Assembly (NCBI GenBank): GCA_965637545.1
Contig: OZ281494.1
Location: forward strand, 16,740,001 to 16,804,000
Origin: Phallusia mammillata
Taxonomy: Eukaryota
Direction: 5' to 3'
DNA: 64,000 nucleotides
The position numbers were made by a program, and so were the translations under genes. Every line of letters begins with the position of its first letter. Position 1 is the stretch's first letter. The notes under the pieces were generated by a model, which did no database searches, was not told where the DNA came from, and worked only from the letters and a program-made list of their open reading frames with translations. Positions 31,501 through 64,000 of the stretch are shown in pieces.

Positions 31501-34500
31501 GTGAATCGTTTTTAAATGCGCTACAACACCAAGAAGATCTGCAGCAGGAAATACAATACGTGACTGCAAAACTTGACGAGTTCCAGGATCGGTTGGACGC
31601 TTCTGATGAAGAGGTTGATCTTCAGAAAACTCTCCAAGCAACACAGGTACAATTCGGACAATTTTATTTTATAACTTTATTTTTTTGCTAAACCTGTTTA
31701 AGTAGAAACAGTGTTCGTCTCTCACACGTTCTAACTGGGACTTACGTAGTAAATTTATCAGTGTAAAAAACTTAACTTTTTAAAACAGGAACTGCTTGAC
31801 GACATCAACCGAGTTATACCCAAACTGGAGTCAGTCGATCGCAAGGTGCGTTTCCTTGGCAACGAACACGCTGGTAAAGACGCCTTCCAAGCGACTGTGT
31901 CTGTGCTGTACGACAGATGGGACACACTAAGAATGCAAGCTACATCCAAACAAAACACTGTTGAGGTACGTTGGCTGTTTTGGCCAAACAACAAACAGTC
32001 TCATTGTTCAATTTTTAATTTAGTTTTATCTAGATTTCTTTGTGTGATATATTTGTTTTTGAACATTGGTCTAAATGACTGTTCTGTTTTCCACACATGA
32101 AGTTGCTTTTAAATTAGTTTCTTTTACAATACTGCTAGATCGATACATTACCAAGAACGACTAATTAGGATGCACTATTTTCACGAATATTAGACTGCCA
32201 GTGTATGAAGTAAAAATGCATTTTCGGTGCACTAAGCCTAAAAGACGAGTTTAGTCAAATGAAACGTGCAACTTACACAAACACATTGTAATTAACATCA
32301 GATCAAAATCCTGGAAGAGGAACAATACAGAAGGATGGTGGAAGCTTACAAAGCTGAACTCCAGCAAGTGACTGACTGGATGGAGGAAGCCAAGAGCAAT
32401 AATCCTCCTCATCATGAAGCACCAGACGGAGGACATCCCTCTCCTCCTGGTGGAGGTAGAAGGATGTCGTCTGACTCTTCTTCTGCATCCAGCAACATGA
32501 CATCTGTACACCAGCAGCTGAAACAATGCAGAAACACAGTTCTCGATATTGAAAGGAAACTTATTCTTCTTTCCGAGTTAAGCGGTAAGACAATTTGTTT
32601 TGGAAAACTTATGACATACAATATGCACTAGACTGAAGTAATGATTTTGGATAATGTTTTTCTTGAGTTTTGTTTATGTTTATGCTCTTTTCTTGAGTTT
32701 TTGTTTATACTTATTTAAAATTGCTAAAATTTTGCTAAAATTGTAACAGTTACAAAGCCTAAAACTGTCCAAAACAACTTTTTTTTTTTTGACATTACTT
32801 GATTTTTACTGCAAGATGATTACTCTGAATTGAATCTTTTTGTGTTGAATTAACACTACATTTATTCTACTTCTACCTGTACATTTCTAGAACGTTTTAG
32901 CAGTTTTTGGACTTTCAATTCCGAGGTATTCGGTATGTCGTCATTCGTTGACCAATACGCTTTTGCTTTAAAACTTAAACGCATTGCGCATTAAACTGCA
33001 TATAACATACCACTTTGACTTCAGGTTTACAAAAATCTTGTTTAAAATGGCGCTTTAAAAAATTGGATAGCCATAGACAATGAATGTGATAAAATATATT
33101 TTTATCGCATTTACCAGTTTCATTTTTTGAACCAACGCTTCACCAGGGAAGCGCATTTACGTTTAGTTGAATGTTAATTTTTTCCATCGAAAATCCTGAC
33201 ATTCTTAACTTCCAGTTTAATTGTAGTTTGGGGCCAGAACTGAAAAATACAAGCCCAAAACCTTGGCCCAAACTCTGTTTGAAAAAAGGCAAAAATCAAA
33301 CAGAGTGTAAAGTCAATCCCGAATCAAGCTATTTAAACTGCAGCCTGTACTCGGTTCGAAAAGTCCAGCCCGACTTACAACTCTGCTGTAGACTTTCTCA
33401 TCTTAGGCACTTTAGGCTCATCTGCAGGCCAGTAAAGCACAACTAAACCAGTCATTGCACTAACACCCACAAATAGGCACACCACGGCGTGACGTAGCCA
33501 TGACGTCAGACTCATCTCGTTCTCGCACGTCATCGACTTCATCCACATCAACCGTCGTTTCATCTGCTCTTCCCGCTACTTTCCGATCCTTGGCCATTTC
33601 GACTTCTCGTTCTGGAACACGTCGCGCTTCGGGTTTGCCCAGCGTGAAGGAGTTGTTGTGTGCTGGTGTGTTTGCTACTAACTATTTGAATATTTAACCA
33701 TAGTTGGTGAAGGTTGTGTAACAAATCGTTTGTTGTACATAACAATACAAAAAGTTGCCTCGGCTTTACAGTTTTGCAGCGTATGGTTATCATTTTATAT
33801 CTTTGTGACAGAGTGCGTATAGTGATAAACATTTAAACGCTTGCACTACTGCTGCATAGCTAGGGTGCTGCGTTAATATATTTTTTTATAAATTGCAAAA
33901 AAGTTTTAAGTTGAAAACGTAGGTTTTTTCTTATAAATCTATGTGTATGATACCACTAATACATGTTTCCGTGTCATGCTTTTCAACTTGCATGTTTTAC
34001 TTATCTTCATCATTGCATGTATTTCTTTTATTCCTGGCGTTCAATCGCTTGAAGAACATTCATTTTTAATAAATTTCGATATTTTGCATGCTTTACTAAC
34101 GCGAATTTTACCATTTCTTACACTCAAGCAAAAGCACCATTCCGTTTTTACATTGTTTATTCTTTCTGTTTTCCTTGTGACTTCTTGCTTTGTTCCTTTA
34201 GTTTCATTAACGTAAAGCATTCATTTTGTGTGCTTTGATCTTTCTATAAACAACTGTAATTTGTCATCATCATGCTTGACAACTTAACCTTCATAACATC
34301 AATACCTTAGCATGAACATTTCATCATTTGCAATTGTTCATTTCACTAAACTGTTTTCGTTCTTATTGGCGGTTGCTTTATTCTCTACCATCAAATACAT
34401 TTACACTAAATAATGCCTCTAGGTTATATTAGGCAATTTTCTAACTTTACTCGTATTTGATTTAGAAAAAAGTTCCAACCTTTCCCAAGCGGACCAGGAG

Positions 34501-43500: not shown

Positions 43501-46500
43501 TTCATCACGTAACAATGGGTTGATCAACTTGTGTTTTATAGGGATTAATTATTGCATCACAATGATTAGATTGTGACATGAGGTATCAAGCTGTACTGCA
43601 AAACATTAGCAAAGGTTGCGAACTAGAAAAAAGTCCATTATTTTTTGGTAATAATTTTAACGCCAATAAATTAAATTTATAGCGACCCCAGAAAAAATTT
43701 AGGCGACCCCACTTGGGGTCGCGACCCACAGGTTGAAGACCACTGCTCTACATGATCCTTTTCGTTAACATACAAACAGTAACATATAAAACACAAATAC
43801 AAGGATCGTTTCTAAACAACTTTTCGGCGCATTCAGGCGAAAATTGCAAGCAAACGTCAACAAATGGAACGATTGTGACGACAAGATGAATGACGTAATC
43901 GCCTGGCTGATCGAAACAAAAGCAGCGACATCAGAAAAATTGCCCACTGCAATCGAAGATCTTCATGCGGAGGCGATAAAATGCCGAGACAGGGAAATCG
44001 TTTTCGAAATGAACCCTGATAAGTTGAAGTAAATATCAGTGTTTTGTTTTTGGCTTCAGGCGGTTGCATTAAAATAATGACTCTGAGCAGCACTGTAAAG
44101 TGAATACAGATTTTTACATAACATTTTGATTCTTGCAGATCGACTGAAAAACTTGTCCAGGGTCTAGTCGACCATGTGTCACGTGACGACATGTCACTTC
44201 AACGTGAAAGGCTTTCATTGGTCCGCGCATTGTGGCATGACGTGCGTAGTCGCCTGGAACAAAGAAGACGTTGCATTGAAACAAGGTCAGTATTGGAAAA
44301 ACAATTAGGTAGGGAGTAATTATCTGCTTCATCAACGCTAGAATAATTTTGGCATTCAAACTTACACAAAAATCGCAATATCGTAAATAAAAGCACAGCC
44401 TGATTAAGTTTAAAAGTTGACGAGTGCCATTACTTCATAGTTGTTTTAGTTCACAATAACCCAACTAAGCTGGCTCCTTAAACTGCAAGACTTTCGTTTG
44501 AATGTAAGCAAGCGACTTCTGGTCAACACTGCGCTTTTTTTTAAATTCGTTAAAAAAATCTCGCACATGTTGCTTATGAGAACAACTTAATTTGTCTGTA
44601 AAACTAAACAACTCAAGATAGATTCATAGTCCACTGTAAACGAAAGTTCTTTCAAGCGAAATCTAGTGAAGCTACGATTGTTATTTTTTCTGAACTTAAA
44701 TATTTGTTTGTGTATATTTATTACCAGACTTGGCGACTGGAACGATTTCGATGCGAAATACCGAAACTTGTGTGCGTGGTTGAATGACATGGAACGTAAG
44801 GTGGCGCACGCGAGTGATGCCGATGCTGAACAATTTCTTGAAAAACTGCACAAGGTGTGTGAAAAAATTTGCTATTCTTAATATCGAACGTTTTCATAAT
44901 GTTTCGCCCAGGTTTTTCATCACAAACCTTGCAACCAAAACAACTATCAATTTATTTAAAACAGGATTATTTGACGGGATCGGACGGTGAGGGTGACAGA
45001 CGGGCAGAACTTGCACTGCTTGCCGATCGTTTGGCGCCATCCAGCGATAAAAAAGAGATGGAGAAGAAGCTTGGAAAAATCAACGACCGGTGGCAACATT
45101 TGGAGGAACTCGTTCGTGCCAGGTATGAGTCGCAAATATGTATCACTCTCATTAGCTTTAATTAAAGTATATTCCTAATTGGAAATTTCCATGTCGATGG
45201 ATAAGCATTTTGCGGAGTTACCTGTTGTTATGTAGCTTGTTTTAATTTGGTGCATTTATTCACTGTTACACTGAAAACCAAGGCAAACCAAAAATGAGGC
45301 CAGTTGTGCTATTCGTTTCGTAAAGTCTTTAAAAGATTTTAAAAGGCTACAAAAATCTTTTGTTCACTATTTTTCCACCTAGTTAGCGCGTATCGAATCA
45401 CGCAAGTTGAATGAATTGACCGGCGAAAATCAACCGTGGTGAAAAATAGCGATAATTTAGTCAAGCGTGTTACGTTGTTTGCCTCGGGCTGTTACGCTTC
45501 GCGGGTTTTGCCTTTTCAGTCGTAACTAAATGCTGGATTCTACACTTTTTTTCCATTTTTCATACATCCGGTCGTTTGTTTTCGGTTTGTTAATGACTTA
45601 TGGTAGGTTCAACAGAAACAGACAGTGCACGTATGTTTAAGATATCTATCAGCAGTTGTCAGCACGTAAAGCAATGTACTGATACAGCAAGACGATCTGT
45701 TGATAAACCACAACTTTAAATGCAACTACTGCAAACTGAAATCATGGTTAGGTACAGGTAACTCTGGGAGGATTACTAAAATTCCATTGAAGTTTAGTAG
45801 TTATTTTTACCAAAATATGATGCTGAACGAAAGTTATAGCTTCTTAACATGATGTGACAGTTGTATTCATTAACCCTGAACTTTTATGACACTAAGACGT
45901 TCAATAACAGCAATTAAAGGAAAATAAGGCGCTCGATCTGCCAGAGCATTTGAACATTTCGAGTTTTAATTTTAATTTAAGTAATACGTATCCGTATACG
46001 GAAACAACAGTCTAATACAACAGTCTAATGTATGAGCACGGATGTGGGGGGAAATAAGCCAGAAAGAGTACTATTCGATCCCAATATTTTGGTGAAACTC
46101 AATAGTTCAATAAAGGCAAAATAGTTGGTGCTGCGGAAAAAGTATGGATGAAATATTAAATCGTGTCAGAACAATGGCACATGTGCAGTGCGAAAACTTG
46201 GACGATAAAATGGCCGTTTATTCAAACTGGTCCGAAAGCTACGAAGAAGATGTATTCGCACTGAAGTACACCGCCCCGCATCAAGCTGTCAAAATGCTTT
46301 ACGACGTCATAGACAATTATAAACTCGACGAAAACTGTGACATTATAGATTTTGCTGCGGGTACCGGATTGGTGGGTAAATGTCTTCGAGAGAGGGGATT
46401 CACCGGTTCGGTGGACGGACAAGACGGCTGTGACGCAATGCTAAGACGTGCCAAGCAATATCGGAACACATTCTGCTGTATTTTAGAGCCGGGTGCTAAA

Positions 46501-49500
46501 CTGCCAGCCGAACTTACATCAAACTCTTACGATGTTGCGACAATATCTGGGGCTTTAAGTCCTTCACAGGTCGACGTGGATTGCATACCAATAATAATCG
46601 GTGCCGTGAGACCGGGTGGTTACATTGTTCTCACGACCAGACTTAACCCTTCTAATCTGCAGTACGTGGAAAGACTGGAAAGCGAAATGAAAAGATTGGA
46701 ACTCGAAGGCGTTTGGGTTTCCCTATCCAAACGGCGTATTGAGGAGTTTGAACTTGCCACTGACGATTCCGAAAAAGTAAACGATTCAAAATACATACCA
46801 GGAGTGGTATACTGTTTCCAAAAACTGTAAAAGATTGTTTTTACACTTTATTTTGTGATGTCGTACTTAGGTTGGTGTTTTTGTGTTTCACTACCCATTT
46901 CATGAAAGTAAATGTTTTGACATTTTCGCATTTGTTTTATGCGTTTGTTAAAAAAAGATGTGAGGTGCATTAAATGTTGGTTTTGAAGAGTATACGATTT
47001 TGTACCGTATTTTGTGAAATATACACCAAGGTGTTTGACGTTACGATCTCAAATAACCTGTTACAAAAACTTTCAGCTGATAAACTTTAGTTGGTTGATA
47101 TTGTTTCCACAACAAACTACACTCAACAACATCTGTAAAATGTGCAAATCGTTTGGAAAACAACTAACACCCTGTTATTCATTTTTTAACACATATTCCT
47201 ATTATTGACCACTGGTGTCGCTCGGGAGCAAAGGGTGTATTTTTTCTTGCTCTCAGATATCGAACGCTGTTCTTCCTCACGCATGTCTAATTAAATGAAC
47301 ATGGTTGAGGCTGTTTACACAGGAAGTATAACAAGTACCTATACAAGTCTAACAAGGCGTGCATAGCGTTACGACGCCACGCGGAGACTGGACACTTAAA
47401 AGTAATGCGTGTCTTAGGGCAACCAGCTTGTCTACAACGTATAACACACCTAAATTTTGCAGTCAGTCAAGAACCGCATCTTACAACCTAAATTACATTT
47501 AAGGTACATATCAAAACGCTTGTTTAATACTGTTTTTAGCAACCGTGACTATAACATAGGATCAAAATAGGGGTGTGGGTCAGTTTAATCAAACCTTTTT
47601 ATTCAAGTTCGTTTTAATTTTTTCAAAAACTGCGTCTGGTTGACCGCATAAATTTCAGTCGAAAAGCCGCTTTTGTCGTCAAAGTAGCCAATCAGTTGAA
47701 GGCACGTTGAAATAAAGGCAACAGCCAATGTCAGGTTAAAAGGAATTTGTGGTTACTACGTTTACACAACAAGTGTAAATTCCTTGCCTGGATAAACTTT
47801 TGGAGAGGATAAGATTAGCAGAATCCCTGAGGCGAAGTGCGTTAATATTCTGAAACTTGTGTTTATGAAGGTGGATGAAATTTTAGGCTTCAAACTGTTG
47901 TAATCTTAACAATTTGTTGACAATTTTGGTAAAACTATCCAATTGTTTAATATTGATAAGGTGAGTGGCTAAAGTTTTATTGCAAATGTATGTTTACAAT
48001 AAAACAACAATGTATATGTTGCAAATTTCAGTCGTTTTCTTTGCTAGGACTGGTACACAAGTATTTACAAATACAAACTACCGTTCAACTTGTTTATGTT
48101 GTAACGTGAACGAAATGTTTGCAGTATGCTGTACATGATTTCGGATGTGTGTAAAACTTGTACGGCAATGTGAACACGCTGTTGTTTGTGACTCAGTCGT
48201 GTATGACGCGGCGGTTGAGAATTCCAATGCGAGGTTACTACAGTTCGAATTACGTAATTCCAAAACGAGCGCATCCAGTTTGAAATTTGCGCGGGAAACC
48301 TGACTATCTTTTAGGACATTACTTTTGCATTGTGTAGGTATAAAACGTGTTGTGTGTGCAAATTTAGTGGATAAACCGTACTAATGGTTTTAAGTTTTCG
48401 TAATAAATTTCTGCCCTTAAACAATTGTGAAGGAATATTGGTCACTGATTGGGGTTTCTGGTATTCACATGTTATATATTTGTGGTCAAAATTTACAGTT
48501 CAGAAAAATTGTAAAAACAAATCGTTTTTGTCACAAAAAAAAACACAAACTCGTGTAAACCTTCGCCGGGTTCGCCCCCAATCATTTATTTCTGCTTCAA
48601 TTGTTTGTCCATGGCCCACTGTTTGGATACGACTAAATTAGGGAAAAATCGTATGCTTTTTTTGCTCCTGTATCCCCATTAACTGGTTTACCGGAAGTCA
48701 GTGTTGTGCTGATTTAATGATGTATGACTCAAAACAGGCCACGTTGCGCGATAAATAATTCAGGCACGAGCTTGCTAATGTCGGAATCTGCATTGATCGA
48801 AACATTTTGGGTCTTCCTGTGTTACGTTACGCCCGATTATATCGTAAAGACAGCCCTATAGGTGTAATAAGGTTAGCTTGGACGCGGCCTGTAGGTCAAC
48901 CCTTACGTACCAAGCTTTTGACATATCACTCATACCAAACTTACATACTACCTCTTGAATTTTACCTGTTTTCAAATTTACATTTTTATTTTACTGCAGA
49001 GGCAAAAAGTTGAAAGAGACGATAGCAGCCGTTGCTCAACTCGATACAAGCATGACCGACCTTCGCGATTGGCTCAAGTTGATTGAGGGCAACTTGTCGG
49101 AACCGGTTGTTCATCAAAACTGTTCAGACGACGATGTGAGATCGAGGCTAAAAGAGCAAAAGGTAATTGCTTTTTGCTGTCTAGCTGTGTAAGCGGGTGT
49201 GAGGATTAACTGGTAAATAGGTAGGATAAAAAGCTAACTGAAATCATGTTAGGCTTATCCGATGTGACAACAACTCAAACTGTTTGGGCAGTTCAGTAAG
49301 ATATGCGATTAGCAACTTTTCCAGTTAACAGACGTTGATGCAAAACGGATGTACACTCGAACAAAAAAACGGATTATAACTTTCAGTTGTTATCTTTCAT
49401 ATATAATAGGCTACTTTTTGTCCCAAATAATGTATGTTTTATTTAGGGTTTAGCACAGTTAGACTGTAACTTATCTGTTTAGTTGCATTCTAAACAGCAA

Positions 49501-55500: not shown

Positions 55501-58500
55501 ATGGCAACATGCGCTGGGACGCTCTCTCACGACGAGTAAGTGGTATTCTGCGTCGACTCAAGTACGCCATCGAGCGGAGAGAGAGTTTCGAAGCACAGAG
55601 AGAGGCTCTTTTAGTCTGGCTAACAGAAACTGATTTGCAACTCACCAATCTCGAACACTTCAGTCCGAAGTCTAGCCTAGAGGAAAAAATGTCAAACGTT
55701 AAGGTAAGGATCAAAGACCAAAGTATACATCTTTGCCCTTGTAACTTGAACTTGGAATTTAGTGATACACTGATCGAATAGATATTAATACTATAGCGCA
55801 CTGATTTGGAAACATCTTTGTCCAACATTCATACGCTAATAAATGTACAGCGATAAGCTGGCTTTAGGTAACCTTCTCCCTGAAATCCATAGCTGGCTTT
55901 TTAAATGTAAACATTCGTAAAACCTGTTATGAAATTATGTTAGGTTAAAAAAATATAGTTGCAAGACCCAAATATGCGTTTGATAGGCGCAAGTGCGGTT
56001 TATCCAAGGTCATACCAGGTTACATTCATGTAGTGCTGCTTAGCAACGATTATGTTTGGCGGTTGTTTATTTTCAAACCTAATCGGTTCACCACGCGCAA
56101 GCAATTAGTAATTGCCTATCTCTCTCATCCGTCCCGATTTAAACCGGCCATAACCTCAATAAGATAGCTCGGAGCGCTTCGTTCTATGTCGGAGTTGTAA
56201 TACTTGTAATCACCCCCTACTTGAGTTTCATTAGTGACGCTGTTCGAGGAACGACTGTTATTGTTGTGATTCGTTAAGTGAAATCTGCCTATTCGTAGGT
56301 ATAGTTGAAAGTTGAGTTATGAGATGTAGCTTTTTTTTTAAAAAAGTGGAATTCAGTTAAATTAATTTGTTGAGTAATGGGAAACAAATAGTAGCATTCC
56401 TAAAATAGACGCCTAGCATTTGTGTGCTGGAGAGCCTGTGAAAAAGTCAATTCCTGTTGTGAAAAACGCTGATGACTCTTTCGATGCCTGATGTAGTATG
56501 CAGTCAGTCTGTGTTGTGTCGACAGCAGTTTGTTGTGAATATGTTTATCAGGCTTTTGAAAATCATTTGAGCATGTTTCGGTTTGTTGATTGATTGACAA
56601 GTATGGGGCGCTTCCCGTGGTGAAGTACCATCATACTTGTTTTGACAAGACTCCCGACCAGGCGTAGTGCAGTCGTTCAGTCCTTTTGTGGCTTTATATC
56701 GCCGTGCAGTTTTGTTGCTCTTCCAATACAAACAAATTTAAACAAGCGCTCGTCGTGTTTTGGGCGTTACGCTAACAACACAACACTAGAAGGAACGCAC
56801 AATATGTAGTCATTTGCAAGTGTCTAGCAGTACAGATTATGAAAGAACTGCAGTGCAGTACATAGTAAAGTGAAAGATGCTTAAAAGCTCGTTGGTTGAA
56901 GTTTCAGCTTATCATTTCCTGTTCTCAGATCCGCTGTATCGTATTGCTGCTAGTTTACCGATCATGCATATGTTTGCTAACGGTAAATTTGTGTGTGCTT
57001 TTGCTGCTGTTGTGTGCACGATGCTCCTACAGCATTAAGATTTACAAGCAACAATAACCGTGCTTCCAAAATCAGTGTTGTCTTAGATCCTTTTAACTTT
57101 TAGATTTTACGTGTTTTAAGCAGCTCACCAGCCTTATTTGACAGGTCACTATACAAAATCTCGCTTTGTAGGTCATTTGCTCATTAGCTATCCAGATGTA
57201 GGCATTCTATTATTATCAAGGTTTTATCATTCACTTGCCGAAGTTAAATGGCATCAGCAAAACTTACTGGTTTTCCACGCGTACGGGTGATCGTTTGAGG
57301 TCTACAAAGCAACAAATAACCTCAATTTGGCCTCAACAATAGCGAAAACGGAGCGAACAATGCTTGTTCCATGTTTGTCTCTGTGCTACGTGATTGGCTA
57401 TGTTTACTGAGCACAGGAGCACCATGTGTGTAGATGTACACGACCAATTGCGGCCTTTGTGAGTAGTCTATGGTTCATGCATGTTATCGGGATACAGCAT
57501 TGCTATAAAGGGAGTTCTCGAATGCCTGTGCAATTGTTTCAACAACTTCCGTGTCTAAAAAGTGTTTAAGCGAAAGGTTTCTGGAAAATATCAAATGTAT
57601 TTTGAAAGCCCGTCCGTCAATGGTTGTGGTTTCTTTGTAAAAATCTGGTTTTGCTTTGAACGTATTCGAAACAACATATGCAGTAGAGAGTTTTAGCTTG
57701 CAGTATGTGTTATTTATGTAACCTTACGCTGTATTGCTTAGCATTAAGGGGTTGTCCCCTAATCTGTAGCATCAATGCAGAGTTTTGCAGAAGGCCAAAG
57801 ATTGGCAGTTTACCTTGGTAGCGAACTCATAAGGTAACTCTACAGCCTACAAAAAAGTTTTGAGGGTTCCACGCAATACCGAGAGAGACTGAATTAGAGG
57901 CTGTGGAGCATGATGAGCAGTGGTTACCGTCTCCGGAGATATAACAGCGCCATTGTTTATCTGATAAAACGTCATTGGGCCGTGAACTAAGGGTGGTCGT
58001 GCGCCCTTTTTCCCGAGCCAACACACACCTGAAAGGCAAACACAAGGCCAAATTGGGAATGCTAGCGTTGTGGCAAAATGTGTGCGATCATTAAAACGTA
58101 CGCCAGTGAACGTGTGCCGGTGAGCCGCAATATTTAGCGATCTGATAGATCAAGTACCGTTCGCGCTGTTTCTGCCTAAACCGTTGGTGAACAAACTTCA
58201 GCTTGCGTGTTTGTTATGCTCACTAGAGTGTTGTATAGTGAACTGATGCGTATTGATCGCGGCTATTCAAAATGTGTCCAAGTGGTTTCAGCGTTGTCAC
58301 AGAACAGCTATACGTGGAGTTATTGGAAGTAAAAGTATTGTTTTAACTTCGTTTTGGTATTGGTTCGAATACAAAAGCATTGGTATAAAAAATAGGTTAC
58401 AATCGTTGGACGTGGTTTTAGACAGCAGTTTGGGACAGTAGCTAATAACGTTGTCGTTTCTAGGTTTCATGGCATAGGGTGGTTTACCTGTTAGTATGGA

Positions 58501-61500
58501 AGACAATTTGTCGTGTTGTCAAGTAATTAGGGATGAGGTGCAGCAGCAGCTTACTTTGCTCACGGTGAGAATTTACTCCCTCAATGAAAATCAAAAAATT
58601 GCTAACAAGGTGTTAACCATAGGTGCATTCATCACAAATATGAAACGAAATGTGCAAATATTAAAACATTTCAAAATTATTTCAGTGTTTAGTTATACGG
58701 ATTTTAACCAACTTGTCAGAAAATGTTAGTTTTGTAACACTTGGCTTGCTTTTTCCAGCTCTTTCAGGCAAAAATCGAGGAACGAATTCCATTACTTCGA
58801 GAATTGGACCAAAAAGGTCGCCTGTTGATAGAGAAGAGCGAGGAGCATGACTGTGTGGCGGTTGAAGAAGAACTGGAGGACTTCCACAAGTATTGCTGGG
58901 AGGTCATTTCAAGGTTGGACCGCTACCACAATCGACTTCTACGGTTGATGGTAAGAAAAATGCTTCGTTTCAACGATAAACAGTTATTTTAGGTATCAGT
59001 GAAACAATGCTTTATTAAGTGCCTTTGGTTTGATTTTGGCGTTTAATGTACTACAATCAGTAGAGCCATTATGTGAGAACTATACTGCAAAAACATTTGA
59101 ATTTTCCGCTCTTTTCACAGCACGATACCGAAATGGAAGCTTGCCAACAGTCCCTCTTCGACGATAGCGAGCTTCAAGACTTCTCTTGGTGGACTGCCAA
59201 CTGTATTCTTGACGGCAGTGACGTCAGCAACTCAGAATCGGAGGATAACACAACCCGAGACTTGCTGGCGACCCCCACTGGTGGTTCGTCTAACATGGCA
59301 AAGACAAAAAGAGATAAATGTAACGGCAGGTATGCAATAGTATTTGGTTTTAGATTCTGCGATTTAGAGATAATTGTCACCATATGCACACAAACTCAAA
59401 AATCCTTTGTTAATTTGTAGGACATCACCTCACAGCATTGGGTCATTAGAGTGGGACCATTACGATATCAGCCAATCAGAGATTGATGCTAAACTTGATG
59501 ATGGTGACTTGACAGGGGATGAGTCGATTTCAGGTCAGTTGCAAGTTTTCTTGGACAACTTTTAATAAACGCTAGCGCGATTTTAAAATGTTTACGCTTG
59601 TAGATTTGTCACCTGACATGTATGACGAGGAAAACACCGAACTTGAAAAAATCAACCTGGATTCCGATTCGAAAAAATCGTCACCGGAACCTGTAAGAAA
59701 ATTTGCTGTGCTTTATGTTATGATATAACCTTAAATATATCCTAACACTACAAATGATTTTATCGCTGAGCAAGCCAGCCAACCTTATTTTTACTTTGTC
59801 CGCAGATAACATTAAAAAGCAATTTAGCTGCAACGACCCGATCTAGACCGGAGGACAGCAATGCAGCAGGTAGCAGTACGTCTCAATTACTTTGATTAAA
59901 ATCTGCCTTAGTCGCCAATGAAGACAAAATTATGGTCAAAGTTTAACTGGAAAATGTTTTTGATTTTGTGTAGTTGACTCCGCATCCCCTAAAAGACGAC
60001 GGCAAGAGACCACCAAGCAAGATCAGAAAGAGAAACAGCGCGCCAGGCTTGAGCAAGATCTCGACGCCGTCTTGGCATGGCTGGACGCAACATCTTTCCC
60101 TTCCACCGAGTCTGTGGCTAAAATTGAGACAAAAGTGAAAGAACTCAAGGTAAAAACGCAGGAAAACAACAGTCTGAAGCGTTTGTAAAAGTTAAAGAAA
60201 AAAAATCTTCTAAATAATATTAATGTGTAGCCTATATGCTGAGGAATCACTTATGAGAATCACAGATTTACGGACGTATTTGTCACTTTTATAAATTTTC
60301 TACATTTACTTTCAACGTTTAGGCATAATTAAAAACACATGTATTTCAGACTTTGCAAAAGGAAATCGAAGCTCGAAAGCCCATCGTTCTCTCCATTAAT
60401 CTGGTTGCGGCGAGATTAACTGACGATGCCGTCTATGATAAAACTGCTGCTAAATCCAAACTAATGAGAGACGGGTGGAAGGAGTTAAACGCAAATGCAC
60501 ACAAACGGAAAGTGGAGCTTCAAAAAATGTTCGTCCGATGCGAGGTAAGTGTGAAAATTTATTTGGAAATTTTGAATTCTTGCACTGTTGCATATCAAAT
60601 TATTCGCTTTGTGCTTTTCCTAGGATGTGAGCCGATCCGCGAAAAAACTGAGGCATTGGATCGAGGAACAGGAAAAGAAGAGAGAGGAGCTTGCTGCTGT
60701 GTGTAGGTTCCACGATTCCCCTGTGCCTGTTTCTCTTCAGATGCTAAGAAAAGCTCACAAAGCCCTTATCCAACTTCGCGTCGAAACTTTAGAGGAACGC
60801 GTAAAGGTAAACAGAAAGCATTGTGTAAGTACACCCAAATCGACAAAAACAAGTATTTTGAGGTGTTTTGATACCAAATGACTATTTGATTGCAATCTCT
60901 TGCGCATGTTTTTATATGGCATTTTGTATCAATGTTCTTGTTCAGATTGCATCCCTTCAAGAGATCTCCAATCAACTTTTTTTCGCCGATGGACGATATC
61001 GTACTCCACAGTCGCCGCCGGTAGAGGGAGCAGCGGAGACCTCGGATCGTTTGGACGACATCGCCGACCGCCTAAAATCGCTTTTAGACCGTGTTGGCGA
61101 AGATATACGAGTGGCTGAAACAGCACTCAAGGAGGAGAGAGGGAGAATGGTAAGTAGAAAAAGGCACTACAACTCCTGAGAGGAAGGCCGGCTGCGGTTG
61201 GATTTACCGCGCCCGCGAAAATCGCCAAAGGGAACAAAAAACGTATCGATTTCGACTGCGTTTACGTTTCAATCAGCTTTTGTTGCATGGATTCACTTTA
61301 TCCCTGCGTCAGTTAGCTGGTCTAAGCATTTCTGTAGAAGTTTTAGATCTTTAGCTTTATCTAGCATAAGCGATGTTTTATGTATGAAAGCCTAAGCTTT
61401 GCATTCACTGAAGCGGAAAGATTTGGTCCGGTGCTTAGAAACTTCTTTTGTGTAATGTCGCATGTGCACAAAACCGTTAAATCTGAATAATTCGCTGACG

Positions 61501-63807
61501 TGTCTGCCAGACCCAGCTCCTCATATAACTGTAATGTCATCGTACAAACTAGAGGTCAGGATTATTTATCGTTGTGGGATAGCTTTACGGTACATATATA
61601 ACAAGATGTTCGTTTCTTTGTTTAACAGAGAGGGAGTGTTGGCTCGAATTCGGAGACGGATTCTGTAGCAAGTGAAGTTTCTCTACATTCGACAACTTCA
61701 ATGAAACTCAAGAAGCTTCGCAGGAAGGTAAAGTATAATGCATTACTTAGTCGGTTTATAAACTATAAAATTTTGACTTCTTCAATAAAAAAAATAATTT
61801 TATACAATTTAATTAAAATGTGCTAGTGCACGCAATAAAAGTAATTTAATCTTTATTAAAATTGAGATCTTATTACATACACTGAATAACAGACTATGTT
61901 GTTTATTTTCTCTCCCCACTTTTTTCTTCTCTCTCTTTTTGTGACGTTGCCGCTGTGCCTTTTTCTCGCGCCTTCTCTCGAATTTCTTAGGTGGATGATT
62001 CAAAGACGATGCACAGGTTAGTCGACAGACCGGTGGAAATCCCAGCATTTTGTGTTTGCCTGTTGTCCTGTATGTTTTACGTTTATGCCTTTGATCGCCT
62101 GCTTTACGTCCGCCCACTTTGCCTGCATACCTTAACTGTTTCCAAAAGGGATAGATTCAGAAGCGAAAGGGGAAACAGTCAAACTTTGCCGCGAAATGTC
62201 AGTCATATTACACGTATGGGCCAAAATTATAGCACACTTCTCATTAGGTTGATTGTAATAAGGCTGGAAATAATTTAAGGTAAGGAAACAACATGCATTA
62301 TATCCTATTGTAGCCGCAATAGAAAACACGTTACAATAGGCATTTCTTAGTTTTCACAGCACCAGAATGCAAGAATACAAACACTTTTCAAGAAAAATAA
62401 GGTACACGGTTCAAAAAATTACATACAAGTGTAGAATTAGTTACTGGCGTCTTTACTCTCGTGTCAAGTTTAAAGGCACGTGTTGGCTTTAGAAGTAAAT
62501 TATTGACTTACAAGATATAGCAAACACCTCTCTACTGCCGTCTAGCGGCAACAATGTCAAAAAACGCAATTACTGCTTATAAGTAATAAAAAAAATGTAT
62601 TTCCCTATAATCCTATTTACGCTGTTGTTGTAATTGGGGTATTTAATTCATATGAGTGTTCTATAACCAACATACGGCCACGATACATAATAAAATGAAA
62701 AAGGACAATTTTGTTAGGGCCTCACGAAACGATGAATGTCTCTTGGGACATTTTGCTAACTGCATGTTTGAAAGTCTGTCTATTATTTTGCATGTAAACA
62801 TAACAATGGTGGTATGTGGTGTGACATGTGTGCATGAGTGTCGGTCAAGAGACTGCTCGTCTTTTTCTTTTACTCTTATCTTTTTAACCCGTCCCCATGT
62901 GCTTTACAACTTATGATCAGTGGAACTCAGGAAATTTCTTTGATCGTATCTTTTCATTTGCGCCCGGCATGACTTAACAGCATTTATTAACTAAATCTTA
63001 TTGTTTCTTGCCCAAAGTGAGTTTTGAAACAAACTTTGTAAGTTACTTTGTAGTTTTTCAGAACTTGGATTCTAGCTGCCAAGCTTCTAAATGGATCTTA
63101 TGGTTTTGTAAAGCTGATTTAATTCTCAAAGACAATTAAGAATGCAAAGTTTGTTTCAAAACGCGCTTTACGCAAAAGCTGAGTCTGTACGAGTGTAGCC
63201 TATTATAATTTCAATCTTGATTTTGCTTTACAGCTTCGAAGAGACGACAAGAAGGCAATTTAACCACGTCTCATCCGACAAAGCACACACAAAACACGAA
63301 ACCTCAACTAACAATCGGACACACGTTGATACGACGACCGTTACCATGAAAACTTCAACTTATCGCAGCGAAGTCAGCCATTCTACACAAAAACTGCTTG
63401 TTGGGCACGAAATTAAACAACACAGCGCCGAAACCTCGGATGAATACAGACACTCGGACAGCGACGGCGAATCGGGCTATGTTGAATACGAAACTGATTA
63501 TCAGATCTTGTCTGACGCAATCAATTGGGCTGTTGAGAGGGAGGAAAAACGTGGCGTCGGGGATTACCCCTTTGACATCGACAACGATAAAGCCAGTTTG
63601 GACTTGTATACCCCAAAACCAGGTTATCTTCGACGTGCTTTCAAAGCCGCGTTACCTTTCTATTTTTTCCTTCTAGCAGTGTTGCTCTTTTTCCTGCTCG
63701 TCCCTCTCACGTGTTTGGATGAGCGTTATGCCTGTCTCCGAAAAAATAACCTTCATTTGTACATTAATCCATCACTTGCCTGGACCGATGGACCTCCACC
63801 GACGTAA
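13..63807 (+). CDS. SYNE1: Giant nesprin (spectrin-repeat, KASH-domain nuclear envelope protein), 5'-partial multi-exon gene, about 120 coding exons in window
   Basis: Successive short exons with GT-AG boundaries join in consistent phase and encode spectrin-repeat helices with the typical W/L pattern. The C-terminal exons closely resemble vertebrate nesprin-1 as I recall it: KKLKETIAAVAQLDTSMTDLRDWL, DIEKHSTGVASVLNLCEVLLHDGDACATE, LDRRWRNICALSMERRLKIEDTQRLWQKFL, QLELINKQYRRLARENRTD, LEWDH, and a KASH ending GPPPT. Probably the single pro-ortholog of SYNE1/SYNE2. Confidence 0.96.
913..1352. mobile_element. Non-autonomous DNA-transposon-like element with (GA)TACCGAGTAC subterminal repeats
   Basis: Terminal inverted repeat TGATGGGACGA (916-926) / TCGTCCCATCA (1339-1349). 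GATACCGAGTAC and ATCGATAC motifs are clustered at both ends. Lies in intron 846-1419. Confidence 0.75.
3765..4416. mobile_element. hAT-family MITE of the same family as 19287-19590, with a nested insertion
   Basis: TIR CAGTGTTTCTCAACCT / AGGTTGAGAACCACTG, with shared CGCGTACCAC and AAATAGGCC(T/C)ATTTT motifs. The outer TSD is not matched (CTTTAGAA vs GTAAGATG). Confidence 0.85.
3945..4266. mobile_element. Nested hAT-like insertion
   Basis: Starts CAGGGGTGTCCAACTC, ends GACCTG, and is flanked by the 8-bp direct repeat CCCAATAC (3937-3944, 4267-4274). Confidence 0.7.
9173..9275. repeat. Two-copy 54-bp tandem duplication
   Basis: GTAGTGTTGCAACT..TAATCGCAA...GTAATAAGATATATA at 9173 and 9227. 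Confidence 0.8.
11365..11903. mobile_element. hAT-family MITE (539 bp)
   Basis: Perfect 16-bp TIR CAGGGGTTCTTAAACT / AGTTTAAGAACCCCTG, perfect 8-bp TSD ATCTAAAA (11357-11364, 11904-11911), G-rich subterminal repeats. Confidence 0.93.
12369..12445 (+). mobile_element. tRNA-derived SINE head / tRNA pseudogene
   Basis: A box TAACTCAGTTGG, intact D arm, T arm GTGGG-TTCGAAT-CCCAC with B box, then T5. The anticodon arm has only a 4-nt loop and the acceptor stem is imperfect, so it is not a functional tRNA. Confidence 0.75.
13608..13672 (+). mobile_element. Degenerate second copy of the same tRNA-derived SINE
   Basis: cctgtcgtgggctggattaccaccgcag aligns to cctgacgtgggttcgaatcccaccgtag (22/28 identical), and both are followed by agatttttcta. 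Confidence 0.55.
13892..28962 (+). CDS. SYNE1: Nesprin spectrin-repeat exons, block 2
   Basis: Hand-mapped exons: 13892-14101, 14256-14478, 14668-14834, 14926-15118, 16019-16139, 16491-16596, 17059-17177, 17275-17482, 17586-17813, 17973-18071, 18341-18458, 19048-19253, 19791-19933, 20317-20506, 20695-20806, 21084-21271, 21686-21873, 22201-22339, 22642-22812, 23225-23377, 24698-24895, 25216-25362, 25648-25809, 26256-26407, 26615-26770, 26930-27116, 27238-27408, 27600-27734, 27967-28155, 28321-28458, 28734-28962. Confidence 0.85.
18715..18846. repeat. Perfect 20-bp inverted repeat with 92-bp spacer
   Basis: AAAACAGGTAAAAAGAATAA (18715-18734) / TTATTCTTTTTACCTGTTTT (18827-18846). Confidence 0.85.
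19287..19590. mobile_element. hAT-family MITE (304 bp)
   Basis: TIR CAGTGATTCTCAA / TTGAGAACCACTG, perfect 8-bp TSD ATCAACAT, subterminal GCGTACCAC repeats. Confidence 0.92.
21294..21365. mobile_element. Truncated hAT MITE left end
   Basis: CAGTGGTTCTCAAAC terminus after the GTTTAGAA target-like site, followed by GGGGCCAAAT...GGAGCCGCA. No matching right TIR found. Confidence 0.55.
24945..25195. repeat. Degenerate two-copy tandem duplication, 135-bp period
   Basis: AAACCTACACAACTAA at 24963 and 25098; TAATACCAATCGAT at 25021 and 25156. Confidence 0.85.
29206..35511 (+). CDS. SYNE1: Nesprin exons, block 3: Ser/Pro-rich disordered linker plus divergent spectrin repeats
   Basis: Exons: 29206-29391, 29792-30043, 30149-30283, 30375-30657, 30730-30839, 30928-31047, 31111-31253, 31488-31646, 31789-31965, 32302-32584, 34466-34590, 34736-34822, 34880-35024, 35333-35511. 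Translation includes LSPTPSPRKRG, VSPRVSTPRD, NSPFVTPRD and KSPGVKRRL, then TVSVLYDRWDTLRMQATSKQ and QLKQCRNTVLDIERKLILLSELS, which resemble the corresponding vertebrate nesprin-1 region. Confidence 0.82.
33477..33665 (+). CDS. Candidate in-frame Ser/Thr/Arg-rich alternative exon (63 codons)
   Basis: Phase-1 acceptor (aatag|GC at 33476, or gtag|CC at 33497) and phase-1 donor GCTG|GTGTGT at 33665 match the phase-1 flanking exons ending 32584 and starting 34466. Encodes GTPRRDVAMTSDSSRSRTSSTSSTSTVVSSALPATFRSLAISTSRSGTRRASGLPSVKELLCA. Confidence 0.55.
33989..34100 (+). promoter_or_regulatory. Intronic splicing-regulatory cluster (Rbfox TGCATG x3, Quaking ACTAAC)
   Basis: TGCATG at 33989, 34014 and 34085; ACTAAC at 34095 (and 33677). 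All lie downstream of candidate exon 33477-33665. Confidence 0.55.
34636..34711. repeat. Perfect 32-bp tandem duplication plus partial third unit
   Basis: GAAAACAAACTACCTGGTTTATCTTTCTTGAG twice (34636, 34668), then GTTTATCTTTCT. Confidence 0.9.
35607..45122 (+). CDS. SYNE1: Nesprin spectrin-repeat exons, block 4
   Basis: Exons: 35607-35702, 35787-35924, 36239-36388, 36519-36701, 36773-36910, 36978-37088, 37308-37481, 37612-37771, 37974-38139, 38381-38498, 38576-38774, 38928-39077, 39150-39269, 39422-39523, 39602-39740, 39810-39969, 40087-40199, 40255-40387, 40455-40647, 41021-41139, 41418-41598, 41774-41943, 42225-42368, 42443-42547, 42718-42949, 43014-43177, 43804(or 43837)-44028, 44139-44285, 44728-44854, 44965-45122. 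Confidence 0.84.
40782..40825 (+). ncRNA. Minimal type I hammerhead ribozyme of Penelope-like element type (probably degenerate)
   Basis: TACC-CTGATGA-A-GATGACCT(GCAT)AGGACGTC-GAAA-T-GTC|GGTA: core CUGAUGA and GAAA, stem II with 7 of 8 pairs, stem I TACC/GGTA, and a GUC cleavage triplet. The usual ACGT stem III palindrome reads ATGT. Confidence 0.7.
43200..43745. mobile_element. hAT-family MITE (546 bp)
   Basis: TIR CAGTGGTCTTCAACCT / AGGTTGAAGACCACTG, perfect 8-bp TSD CTCTACAT, subterminal GCGACCCC repeats and a GGGTCGCGACCC palindrome. Confidence 0.93.
46144..46830 (+). CDS. METTL27: Intronless class I SAM-dependent methyltransferase, METTL27/WBSCR27-like, nested in a nesprin intron
   Basis: 228-aa ORF with the N-terminal YSNWSESYEEDV...YTAP segment, motif I IIDFAAGTGLVG, an acidic beta2 end VDGQDGCDAML, YDVATISG and VRPGGYIVL. 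It lies wholly inside intron 45123-48999. The family assignment is from motif recognition only. Confidence 0.8.
   Translation: MDEILNRVRTMAHVQCENLDDKMAVYSNWSESYEEDVFALKYTAPHQAVKMLYDVIDNYKLDENCDIIDFAAGTGLVGKCLRERGFTGSVDGQDGCDAMLRRAKQYRNTFCCILEPGAKLPAELTSNSYDVATISGALSPSQVDVDCIPIIIGAVRPGGYIVLTTRLNPSNLQYVERLESEMKRLELEGVWVSLSKRRIEEFELATDDSEKVNDSKYIPGVVYCFQKL
48279..48298. promoter_or_regulatory. E2F site adjacent to a CHR-type hexamer
   Basis: TTTGAA-ATTT-GCGCGGGAAA: E2F core TTTCCCGC on the minus strand, with a short spacer to the TTTGAA/TTCAAA hexamer. Confidence 0.35.
49000..61727 (+). CDS. SYNE1: Nesprin conserved C-terminal spectrin repeats and adaptive domain, block 5
   Basis: Exons: 49000-49162, 54376-54563, 54767-54917, 55031-55144, 55494-55703, 58759-58950, 59121-59329, 59421-59533, 59604-59692, 59806-59869, 59974-60149, 60350-60544, 60624-60806, 60946-61149, 61629-61727. 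This is the region most similar to vertebrate nesprin-1. Confidence 0.92.
52493..54211 (+). CDS. Long low-complexity Ser/Thr/Pro-rich ORF in a nesprin intron; probable alternative 5' coding exon of a short nesprin isoform (or an independent nested gene)
   Basis: Uninterrupted 1.76-kb ORF (52451-54211) in AT-rich intron, with a good-context start gccATG at 52493. It has about 19 S/T-P sites and no recognisable domain. A phase-0 GAG|GTTGCT donor at 54190/54191 fits the phase-0 acceptor at 54376. Confidence 0.7.
   Translation: MFSPEYFAKQSAYVESLHNALEVALNGSCELANEPNARLKICNDCQKPQLFYSESAPNSPCAIKRHLDFDEPKVSTESPERDKGTYVTAVMNTLINTRSPNSSYNESLLNESSRSDRQESPISHKQFFLHRRPSMRAENSRSKGSPAKYFRRSLRLQRNTVPLVESPNSSNNATETPQSTSDPVQTDVLSGVSPLVDNITPCNKADGPGKITRNSTLVKRDAPNGSNPQTNSSGVRKDCTSKQDIYYTLSPLLLDETADKVKPDFDSLHAKSKDKTDFVDTPCAKPMEGVCEYEGKTADPSESDSCSESSSSATSTSGGRPEYFAVIKKGDPKRKRDKSRDRSMSFGTSFGRHSNSFHSTHAQVMSVLGDRTNIPSDSNQEKPMEQTNKTISSSVKSTSINQVANLHIEATRNLTETPTTPKLPPPETPNIGYASQMTTPGHEPGLLSFSNVFELGDVSGFDLTDSYVEETDFMKDGYCQCSYCNRNEDIFTSTQLKDWSHEDALHEATHCSRHKPRGREFDTPLTRADLQSPQPIEKKPYKRSPEYQVIMDLFCQCRKQADIDHEVAFRIQ
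58496..58564 (+). CDS. Candidate alternative first coding exon MEDNLSCCQVIRDEVQQQLTLLT
   Basis: ATG at 58496 with an in-frame upstream stop at 58475. Donor ACG|GTGAGA in phase 0 matches the acceptor at 58759 (194-bp intron). An upstream acceptor ctaat...gtttctag| lies at 58463. Confidence 0.5.
59446..59460 (+). other. LEWDH motif of the nesprin adaptive domain (kinesin light-chain W-acidic binding motif)
   Basis: TTA GAG TGG GAC CAT in the context GRTSPHSIGSLEWDHYD, matching the vertebrate nesprin GRDTPASVDSIPLEWDHDYD. LEWD binding to kinesin light chain is established for nesprins. Confidence 0.9.
61991..62016 (+). CDS. SYNE1: 26-nt nesprin microexon (VDDSKTMH+AG) required for KASH reading frame
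   Basis: Long pyrimidine tract then ttcttag|GTGGATGATTCAAAGACGATGCACAG|gttagt. It enters in phase 0 (matching the 61727 donor) and exits in phase 2 (matching the 63234 acceptor). Confidence 0.8.
62761..62836 (+). promoter_or_regulatory. Intronic Rbfox TGCATG cluster (x3) downstream of the 26-nt microexon
   Basis: TGCATG at 62761, 62789 and 62831 within 76 bp. Confidence 0.55.
63234..63807 (+). CDS. SYNE1: Nesprin terminal exon: Ser/Thr/His-rich linker, transmembrane helix and luminal KASH peptide
   Basis: Acceptor ttttgctttacag|C. Encodes YLRRAFKAALPFYFFLLAVLLFFLLVPLTCLDERYACLRKNNLHLYINPSLAWTDGPPPT*. Cys at -23, Pro at -11, aromatic at -7 and a terminal PPPX are all present. Confidence 0.96.
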
Positions 63808-64000
63808 TCGTTGCGTTTTTCGCACCTTTTTGTTCTTTCTAATGGTGCTGTGGAGACAAATTGAAGTCGGAAAGTTACCGGAGTCCAAGAGTTGATTTAC
63901 AGCAACAAGATTCAGTTTGGCTGTATTCCGAGGTTTCGTCGTTTCTGTATGCATTCGTACTTCGACTATTAACAATGAAAGAAACATGGACAGGAAAGTC

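What the first reader, a model, noticed from the sequence alone, without database searches (positions are those of the whole stretch)
61905..63263. A 26-nt frameshifting microexon acts as an on/off switch for the KASH anchor
Exon 61629-61727 ends in phase 0 and the KASH exon acceptor (63234) is phase 2, so KASH is translated only if the 26-nt microexon 61991-62016 is included. Skipping gives ...MKLKKLRRK-LRRDDKKAI-stop (TAA 63261-63263). This stop is in the last exon and so is not expected to trigger NMD, yielding a soluble nesprin with a basic NLS-like tail. The microexon has hallmarks of regulation: an unusually long CU-rich tract (61905-61990), YGCY (MBNL-type) clusters on both sides, and three TGCATG within 76 bp downstream (62761-62836) in a 1.2-kb intron. 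KASH-less isoforms made by splicing are known for vertebrate nesprin-2; a single-microexon toggle here is my inference. Combined with the internal start exons, it gives a combinatorial isoform system.
Basis: partly seen in the sequence, partly recalled or inferred. Interest (0 to 1): 0.85.

Follow-up and report, generated by a model that had tools for sequence, protein, structure and literature searches.

The report
Microexon switch for nesprin KASH anchor
A 26-base exon in an invertebrate nesprin gene decides, by being spliced in or left out, whether the giant protein ends in its nuclear-envelope anchor (KASH) or in a 9-residue tail; both RNA forms exist and a related species has the same design, which echoes a switch already described for human nesprin-1.

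Summary
Exon 61629-61727 ends in phase 0. The terminal exon (from 63234) needs two extra bases to read the KASH domain (Pfam PF10541, ends ...WTDGPPPT*). The 26-nt exon 61991-62016 supplies them.

Three runs carry the microexon (joints 61727>61991 and 62016>63234). One run's only assembled path skips it (61727>63234) and so ends in LRRDDKKAI*. No other exon is used.

A related species (L002) has the same layout: a phase-0 exon, then a 271-nt intron. Next comes a ~90-nt pyrimidine, AG-free tract, a 20-nt microexon (also 2 mod 3) and the same GTTAGT donor.

The skip-frame tail is conserved (LRRDDKKAI*, LRRDDKKAS*, LRRNDRK*) while the overlapping KASH frame is not (simulation P about 0.003). UGCAUG is enriched in the microexon-to-KASH intron in all three species.

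The principle is already known: skipping of human nesprin-1 exon 145 frameshifts away KASH (PMC3388047). This is therefore a new variant, a purely frame-setting microexon in a non-vertebrate, probably a tunicate.

The regulators, the fate of the protein and the NLS idea remain inferences.

The parts
59446..59457 (+). LEWD motif in an upstream constitutive exon. By established knowledge this W-acidic motif binds kinesin light chain in vertebrate nesprin-1/2. Both isoforms keep it.
   Evidence: The motif SLEWDHYDISQSE is conserved in L002 (71% identity over the exon).
61629..61727 (+). Constitutive 99-nt exon that ends in phase 0 (...MKLKKLRRK). Donor AAG|gtaaag.
   Evidence: Present in the contigs of all four RNA runs. 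Ortholog at L002 6406-6510 also ends in phase 0.
61892..61990 (+). AG-free zone of 96 nt that includes the 86-nt CU tract (61905-61990). It implies a distant branch point and a PTB/U2AF-type platform.
   Evidence: L002 has a 91-nt AG-free, 78-80% pyrimidine tract that starts at a TACTAAC.
61991..62016 (+). 26-nt cassette microexon (VDDSKTMH + AG). It sets the reading frame for the KASH exon.
   Evidence: Joints 61727>61991 and 62016>63234 in X1, X4 and X9. Skipped in X13. The L002 ortholog is 20 nt (6782-6801), also 2 mod 3.
62017..62022 (+). Microexon donor GTTAGT, with a suboptimal U at +3. Identical in L002.
62017..62140 (+). U/G-rich, YGCY-dense stretch downstream of the microexon. Candidate intronic enhancer.
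   Evidence: 4.8 per 100 nt against 1.16 background. L002 reaches 2.4 per 100 nt.
62015..62278 (+). Frame that stays open for 87 codons if the microexon donor is not used (read-through into the intron). It holds a hydrophobic stretch.
   Evidence: The L002 equivalent is open for 104 codons. Peptide similarity is weak, E 0.078. Unspliced RNA contigs cover it.
62761..62836 (+). Three UGCAUG (Rbfox-type) motifs within 76 nt, lying 403-473 nt upstream of the KASH acceptor.
   Evidence: L001 has TGCATGGGTGTCGGT, matching 62831-62845.
63003..63180 (+). Strong intronic hairpin (31-nt arms) about 55 nt upstream of the KASH acceptor.
   Evidence: -57 kcal/mol, z -5.65. Not conserved in L001 or L002 and not a repeat in the window.
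63234..63263 (+). Dual-read start of the terminal exon. The skip frame gives LRRDDKKAI + TAA. The KASH frame gives (S)FEETTRRQFN.
   Evidence: Substitution simulation.
63460..63501 (+). Invariant SDGESGYVEYETDY motif in the linker. The skip isoform loses it.
   Evidence: Also present in Ciona savignyi P0003 and TARA P0004.
63628..63807 (+). KASH domain (TM helix 63652-63708, luminal peptide ending PPPT) followed by the stop codon.
   Evidence: PF10541, residues 132-190 of the exon translation..
63808..64000 (+). 3'UTR shared by both isoforms. It runs beyond the end of the window.
   Evidence: contigs are colinear to 64000 and extend 146-338 nt further.

Best explanation
This is the 3' end of a nesprin-1/2-type gene, in which a 26-nt cassette microexon acts purely as a reading-frame key.

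When the microexon is included, the phase-0 exon 61629-61727 is joined through it (+26 nt) to the terminal exon. That exon is then read in the frame that encodes a ~130-residue linker and the KASH domain, which inserts in the outer nuclear membrane and binds SUN proteins.

When the microexon is skipped, the same terminal exon is read one frame over. Translation stops after nine residues (LRRDDKKAI), giving a nesprin that lacks the linker, the transmembrane helix and the SUN-binding peptide but keeps the same 3'UTR.

Shown: the anatomy, both mRNA forms, a change in which form is the major one between samples, and conservation of the layout and of the skip-frame tail.

Inferred:
- the KASH-less protein is made and functional. 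The conserved tail argues for it.
- the choice is regulated through the long pyrimidine, AG-free tract with a distant branch point, the weak GTTAGT donor and UGCAUG (Rbfox-type) elements in the downstream intron.
For: - Inclusion joints are in the main contigs of X1, X4 and X9 (depths 170, 58 and 37). The skip joint 61727>63234 is in the only contig of X13 (depth 9.2), with exact GT..AG ends.
- With the microexon the frame is open through 12 exons to PPPT*. KASH scores 53 bits on Pfam.
- The rod aligns colinearly with 5,900-7,500-residue KASH proteins at E 1e-20 to 1e-22.
- L002 has the same architecture: a 271-nt against 263-nt upstream intron, a 20-nt against 26-nt microexon, the identical GTTAGT donor, a 91-nt against 96-nt AG-free tract, and the same acceptor phase.
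- The microexon peptide itself is not conserved (VDDSKTMH against VETEGE). What is kept is length mod 3.
- Skip-frame tails are LRRDDKKAI*, LRRDDKKAS* and LRRNDRK*. The KASH frame over the same bases reads FEETTRR in the window against FVEMTGS in L002. A random placement of the same 7 substitutions reaches the skip-frame score in 0.3% of trials.
- TGCATG density in this intron is 2.5/kb against 0.33/kb in the window. L002 has 4 in 3.2 kb against 4 in the other 17 kb. L001 has 2 in 835 nt.
- Unspliced contigs cover only the microexon-flanking introns, at about 10-18% of exon depth. The other nine introns have none. This fits slow, regulated splicing.
Against: - Only four runs could be laid, and only one shows skipping, at low depth. 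Contigs report only the major path, so no ratios are known.
- The tissue or stage of the runs is hidden, so regulation rests on one between-study difference.
- There is no protein evidence.
- The skip mRNA has a 3'UTR of more than 880 nt, which could trigger EJC-independent NMD in invertebrates.
- The tail-conservation test rests on 22 nt and on a region chosen after seeing it. A purine-rich splicing enhancer could add to the nucleotide conservation.
- The UGCAUG sites in the window lie 745 nt or more from the microexon, outside the classical proximal zone.
Confidence: 0.75

Rival explanations
1. The microexon is functionally constitutive. The skipped mRNA is splicing noise or an unproductive product that merely lowers the KASH-isoform dose, and no KASH-less protein has a function.
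For: Three of four runs show inclusion as the major form, and the skip run is shallow. Microexons are intrinsically hard to recognise. A long 3'UTR could make the skip form unstable.
Against: In X13 the skip form is the only assembled path, so it is the majority there. The skip-frame tail and its early stop are conserved in three species while the overlapping KASH frame drifts. The stop lies in the last exon.
Confidence: 0.15
2. The switch has three outcomes. Besides inclusion and skipping, failure to use the microexon donor (read-through, intron retention or intronic polyadenylation) gives a third C-terminus of about 87 residues with a hydrophobic, membrane-anchor-like segment and no SUN-binding peptide.
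For: The read-through frame is open for 87 codons in the window and 104 in L002, while the other two frames are closed. Chance is about 0.02-0.03 and 0.014 respectively. Both start with a hydrophobic stretch. Unspliced contigs over 61807/61901-63064 reach 10-18% of exon depth in three runs, while other introns are empty.
Against: The peptides are barely similar (E 0.078) and have no Pfam match. U/G-rich enhancer sequence naturally lacks stops and encodes hydrophobic residues. The unspliced contigs also contain the upstream intron, which has an early in-frame stop, so they may simply be pre-mRNA. No poly(A) end was seen.
Confidence: 0.12
3. The skip contig in X13 is an artefact (assembly error or a genomic deletion allele), and no alternative splicing occurs.
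For: A single contig from a single run.
Against: 31-mers across the joint cannot arise without reads that carry it. The joint removes exactly intron + microexon + intron with GT..AG ends (1506 nt), and the contig is otherwise spliced like the others. A de Bruijn graph builds no new words.
Confidence: 0.03

Closest known systems
Human nesprin-1 deltaKASH (skipping of SYNE1 cassette exon 145; Rajgor et al. 2012, PMC3388047)
   Same: Skipping of a cassette exon just before the last exon shifts the frame. The last exon is then read as a short new tail (11 aa, VHKRWLRFLPF) with a stop, and the 3'UTR is the same. KASH is lost and the product leaves the nuclear envelope.
   Different: By my own knowledge of the gene, exon 145 codes part of the KASH region itself and is not a microexon. 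Here the toggled exon is 26 nt (20 nt in the relative), codes nothing conserved and lies about 130 codons upstream of the transmembrane helix. The whole KASH domain sits in one exon. The intron positions differ, so the exons are probably not homologous.
Human nesprin-2 deltaKASH1 and deltaKASH2 (PMC3388047)
   Same: KASH-less isoforms made by splicing. DeltaKASH1 also works by a frameshift with the same 3'UTR, and it is tissue-restricted (brain, kidney).
   Different: DeltaKASH1 removes a block of exons (110-113). DeltaKASH2 uses an alternative 3'UTR. Neither is a single-microexon toggle.
Drosophila Msp300 and Klarsicht KASH-less isoforms (PMC8616381, PMC2733748)
   Same: An invertebrate nesprin or KASH gene makes both KASH+ and KASH- products that have separate functions.
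   Different: In those genes the products arise through alternative poly(A) sites, terminal exons and promoters, not through a frame-setting cassette exon.
Regulated microexons (27 nt or less) of bilaterian neural and muscle programmes (SRRM4/eMIC, Rbfox, PTB)
   Same: The size class, the long pyrimidine tract, the weak donor, the conserved flanks and the intronic UGCAUG.
   Different: By my own knowledge, most such microexons preserve the frame and fine-tune protein surfaces. This one is frame-shifting by design. No UGC motif lies close to the acceptor (nearest at -35 and -43).

Membership tests
KASH-domain protein of the nesprin-1/2 (SYNE1/2, ANC-1, MSP300) type | C-terminal KASH domain: a transmembrane helix plus a luminal peptide of about 30 residues that ends in PPPX at the very C-terminus | tested here: met
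   PF10541 at 53.4 bits against a cut-off of 23, residues 132-190. The sequence ends WTDGPPPT followed by the stop.
KASH-domain protein of the nesprin-1/2 (SYNE1/2, ANC-1, MSP300) type | Long spectrin-repeat rod upstream of KASH, colinear with giant nesprins | tested here: met
   Residues 2-494 of the spliced product align colinearly with the last ~500 rod residues of 5,900-7,500-residue KASH proteins, at E 1e-20 to 1e-22 and ~25% identity. A LEWD motif is present. Pfam found no Spectrin hit in five large upstream ORFs, so the repeats are divergent.
KASH-domain protein of the nesprin-1/2 (SYNE1/2, ANC-1, MSP300) type | N-terminal calponin-homology actin-binding domains | not tested
   The 5' end of the gene lies outside or far upstream in the window and was not examined.
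DeltaKASH by frameshifting cassette exon (as in human nesprin-1 exon 145) | Cassette exon whose length is not a multiple of three, immediately upstream of the terminal exon | tested here: met
   26 nt in the window and 20 nt in L002. Both are 2 mod 3.
DeltaKASH by frameshifting cassette exon (as in human nesprin-1 exon 145) | Both inclusion and skipping mRNAs exist | tested here: met
   inclusion in X1, X4 and X9, skipping in X13.
DeltaKASH by frameshifting cassette exon (as in human nesprin-1 exon 145) | The new stop lies in the terminal exon and the 3'UTR is shared | tested here: met
   TAA at 63261-63263. The X13 contig is colinear from 63234 to beyond 64000.
DeltaKASH by frameshifting cassette exon (as in human nesprin-1 exon 145) | The protein product lacks nuclear-envelope anchoring | not testable with these tools
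   Needs isoform-specific tagging or antibodies.
Rbfox-regulated alternative exon | (U)GCAUG clusters in the flanking intron, conserved between species | tested here: met
   There are 3 in 1217 nt against 0.33/kb background in the window. L002 has 4 in this intron, two of them at +210 and +220 from the microexon. L001 has 2 in 835 nt, one inside a 15-nt conserved block.
Rbfox-regulated alternative exon | Exon inclusion depends on Rbfox | not testable with these tools
   Needs a perturbation experiment or CLIP.
SRRM4/eMIC-dependent neural microexon | UGC motif between the pyrimidine tract and the acceptor AG | tested here: not met
   The nearest TGC is at -35 and -43 in the window. None is in the last 40 nt in L002.

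The most novel reading that the evidence does not exclude
The microexon is the hub of a conserved three-way C-terminal choice.
1. Spliced in: a KASH/SUN-coupled nesprin.
2. Skipped: a free nesprin with a selected basic tail, RK-LRR(D/N)D(K/R)K.
3. Donor unused: a nesprin with a different hydrophobic membrane segment that cannot bind SUN. This would resemble the KASH-independent, membrane-dependent function reported for C. elegans ANC-1.

The start of the terminal exon would then be a true dual-coding sequence maintained by selection in two frames.
Probability: 0.12. Interest if true: 0.75.

Novelty: new variant of a known kind. Interest (0 to 1): 0.6.

Why it matters
KASH-less nesprins are increasingly seen as functional. 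Examples are the cerebellar KASH-less nesprin-1, the KASH-independent roles of ANC-1, and Msp300 at Z-discs. How and when cells choose between the anchored and the free form is still poorly understood.

Here the choice comes down to one 26-nt exon with conserved flanks, in a small-intron genome. That makes it easy to test: two antisense oligos, or a 26-nt deletion or fixation, would give animals that are KASH-only or KASH-less-only.

The same logic (a frameshifting cassette exon before the KASH exon) occurs in human SYNE1 with a different exon. That points either to repeated invention of the trick or to an old chordate feature. The conserved skip-frame tail is a small, clean example of dual-frame coding.

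Tried and rejected
1. I looked for another exon or acceptor in 61728-63233 that could supply the phase. None is used in any of the four runs.
2. L001 (Logan DRR090687) reaches only 815 nt upstream of its KASH exon. An 11-nt match to the microexon donor (TGCACAGGTTA at 361-371) has no pyrimidine tract and no acceptor giving 2 mod 3. I rejected it as chance.
3. L008 (TARA, P0004) is a distant KASH gene whose previous exon seems to join in frame without a microexon. It does not inform on this toggle.
4. The search for more species gave little.
   - The metagenome scan returned only the L002 species again.
   - The profile search of 1.84 billion representatives gave only P0001-P0004 as close kin.
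   - The P0003 (Ciona savignyi) contig is not on record.
   - P0091 is a vertebrate nesprin.
5. Organism identity was not recovered. The run and metagenome accessions occur in no paper and the protein atlas was uninformative. A tunicate is inferred only from the best named hit.
6. Rfam finds nothing in 61400-64000, so an intron-hosted small RNA does not explain the intronic RNA coverage.
7. A dilysine KKXX reading of the tail fits KKAI and KKAS but not L002 (NDRK), so I dropped it.
8. I could not fetch skip or inclusion ORFs of this species from the protein collection. The queries would have to be spliced sequences typed by hand, so I left that out.

Full report
**Observation.**
- Exon 61629-61727 is bounded by ..aacag| and AAG|gtaaag. 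It translates to ...HSTTSMKLKKLRRK and ends in phase 0.
- The 26-nt exon 61991-62016 is bounded by ..tcttag| and CAG|gttagt.
- The terminal exon begins at 63234. Read from 63235 it is open for 190 codons and ends ...WTDGPPPT*. Residues 132-190 match Pfam KASH at 53.4 bits against a cut-off of 23.
- Read from 63234 it gives LRRDDKKAI, with TAA at 63261-63263.
- Joining the exon chain seen in RNA gives one open frame of 707 codons with the microexon. Without it the product is 517 residues.

**RNA evidence.** I laid Logan contigs of four RNA runs from four studies on 58001-64000.
- All four runs share nine GT..AG introns upstream.
- In X1, X4 and X9 (contig depths 170, 58 and 37) the main contig has joints 61727>61991 and 62016>63234, so the microexon is included.
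- In X13 (depth 9.2) the only contig crossing this region has joint 61727>63234. It skips 1506 nt with GT..AG ends and continues colinearly beyond 64000.
- Contigs keep only the dominant path. The major isoform therefore differs between samples.
Neither was found.
- Contigs give no ratios, and the tissue or stage of the runs is hidden.

Unspliced contigs cover 61807/61901-63064 at about 10-18% of exon depth in X1, X4 and X9. The other nine introns, including the 479-nt one just upstream, have none. This fits slow or regulated removal of the two introns that flank the microexon. It rules out genomic DNA contamination as the source.

**What the gene is.** The spliced product aligns colinearly (residues 2-494, then KASH) with the C-terminal rods of 5,900-7,500-residue KASH proteins that end RYTNGPPPT, at E 1e-20 to 1e-22. 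It also carries a LEWD motif at 59446-59457. So it is a nesprin-1/2-type gene.

The nearest relatives of the KASH exon are two unnamed sequences, P0001 (54% identity) and P0002 (42%). After them come a Ciona savignyi KASH protein (35%) and a TARA plankton sequence. The organism is therefore probably a tunicate. This is an inference only.

**Conservation.** P0002 lies on 8-53-kb contigs (L002-L010, all one species) that carry the orthologous exon chain. The L002 layout is as follows.
- The exon homologous to 61629-61727 is 6406-6510. It reads ...SLKLRMMQRK and also ends in phase 0.
- After a 271-nt intron (263 nt in the window) comes a 91-nt AG-free tract that is 78-80% pyrimidine and starts at a TACTAAC.
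- Then comes a 20-nt exon, 6782-6801, with the identical donor GTTAGT.
- The KASH exon at 9991 has the same acceptor phase.
- 20 and 26 are both 2 mod 3. The encoded peptides (VETEGE against VDDSKTMH) are unrelated.

Selection therefore keeps the frame shift, not a peptide. In the window the AG-free zone before the microexon (96 nt) is the longest among the last 11 exons. The CU tract is in the top 0.02% of tiles.

**The skip-frame tail.** The first ~30 nt of the terminal exon are far better conserved than what follows.
- In the skip frame they read LRRDDKKAI* (window), LRRDDKKAS* (L001) and LRRNDRK* (L002).
- In the KASH frame the same bases read FEETTRRQFN, FAETTRRQVS and FVEMTGSEL.
- Between the window and L002 the seven substitutions are synonymous or conservative in the skip frame (BLOSUM sum 28). 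In the KASH frame they are mostly radical (sum 10).
- Random placement of seven substitutions reaches 28 in only 0.3% of trials. It reaches the observed difference between the frames in 2%.
- Between the window and L001 the KASH-frame residues change (FN to VS) while the skip-frame stop is kept (TAA to TAG).

This is a small sample and the region was chosen after looking. It nevertheless argues that the KASH-less product is translated and under selection.

**Regulatory marks.**
- TGCATG occurs 21 times on the + strand of the 64 kb. The total is not enriched, but three of the sites fall within 76 nt at 62761-62836.
- The microexon-to-KASH intron is enriched in all three species. The window has 2.5/kb against 0.33/kb. 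L002 has 4 sites, two at +210 and +220 from the microexon and two at -253 and -77 from the KASH acceptor, against 4 in the other 17 kb. L001 has 2 in 835 nt.
- One L001 site sits in a 15-nt block shared with the window.
- YGCY is dense on both sides in the window (top 0.6% of tiles). In L002 it is only about 2-fold enriched downstream and absent upstream.
- No UGC lies near the acceptor, so an SRRM4-type code is not supported.

Rbfox-type control is the best-supported guess and PTB is plausible. Both are untested.

**Comparison with what is known.** Rajgor et al. 2012 (PMC3388047) showed three routes in the human genes.
- Skipping of human nesprin-1 cassette exon 145 shifts the frame. It replaces KASH by an 11-residue tail and uses the same 3'UTR. 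The form is widely expressed, and a short deltaKASH construct moves from the nuclear envelope to the nucleus.
- Nesprin-2 deltaKASH1 removes exons 110-113 with a frameshift.
- Nesprin-2 deltaKASH2 uses another 3'UTR.

Drosophila makes KASH-less Msp300 and Klarsicht through alternative ends. No paper in the library links a microexon to nesprin or KASH, and none treats ascidian nesprin isoforms.

The principle is thus known. What is new here is the form: a tiny exon with no coding content of its own, placed ~130 codons before the transmembrane helix and conserved with its flanks in a non-vertebrate lineage, together with a selected alternative-frame tail.

- The basic cluster KLKKLRRK is in the constitutive exon, so both isoforms carry it. 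Skipping adds LRR..KK. An NLS function is untested.
- 'Last exon, hence no NMD' is the vertebrate rule. The skip mRNA has a 3'UTR of more than 880 nt, which could matter in invertebrates. Its dominance in X13 argues that it is stable.

**An unexplained extra.**
- If the microexon donor is not used, the frame stays open for 87 codons in the window (to TAA 62276-62278) and 104 codons in L002. The other two frames are closed. Chance is about 0.02-0.03 and 0.014.
- Both peptides begin with a hydrophobic stretch, but their similarity is weak (E 0.078). U/G-rich enhancer sequence could produce this by itself.
- I rate a third, read-through isoform at about 12%.

**Verdict.** The finding is real and its core interpretation is supported. 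It is a new variant of a known kind, of moderate to good interest, and it offers an unusually clean experimental handle.

Noticed in passing
window 62015-62278; L002 6800-7114: The read-through frame past the microexon donor stays open for 87 codons (104 in L002), while the other two frames are closed. Both peptides start with a hydrophobic segment. Peptide similarity is weak (E 0.078).
   Followed up: partly
window 61807-63115: Unspliced RNA contigs cover only the two introns flanking the microexon, at 10-18% of exon depth in three runs. Nine other introns have no coverage. This could be detained or retained introns, or intronic polyadenylation. AATAAA stands near 62585 and 62689.
   Followed up: partly
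window 63003-63180: A strong hairpin (31-nt arms, -57 kcal/mol, z -5.65) lies about 55 nt upstream of the KASH acceptor. It is not conserved in L001 or L002, is not a repeat in the window and has no Rfam match.
   Followed up: partly
window 63460-63501: The motif SDGESGYVEYETDY in the linker is invariant in the window, L001 and L002. It is recognisable in Ciona savignyi (VESGYVEYD) and in a TARA sequence (DESGYVDYD). It is a conserved acidic or tyrosine motif of unknown role, and the skip isoform loses it.
   Followed up: no
window 33989-34090: A second cluster of three + strand TGCATG within 102 nt lies in the same gene, at the place of another first-stage note (a hidden alternative exon).
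   Followed up: no
window 46144-46830: An intronless + strand ORF of 228 aa inside a nesprin intron has weak methyltransferase Pfam hits (Methyltransf_11 at 22.8 bits, cut-off 21.2).
   Followed up: no
L001 1-835 (Logan DRR090687): The only contig of this relative holds at least 815 nt of the intron upstream of its KASH exon joined to the exon and the 3'UTR. If that run is RNA, the intron before the KASH exon is retained there too.
   Followed up: no
window 59446-59457: A LEWD (W-acidic, kinesin-light-chain-type) motif lies in a constitutive exon and is conserved in L002.
   Followed up: no
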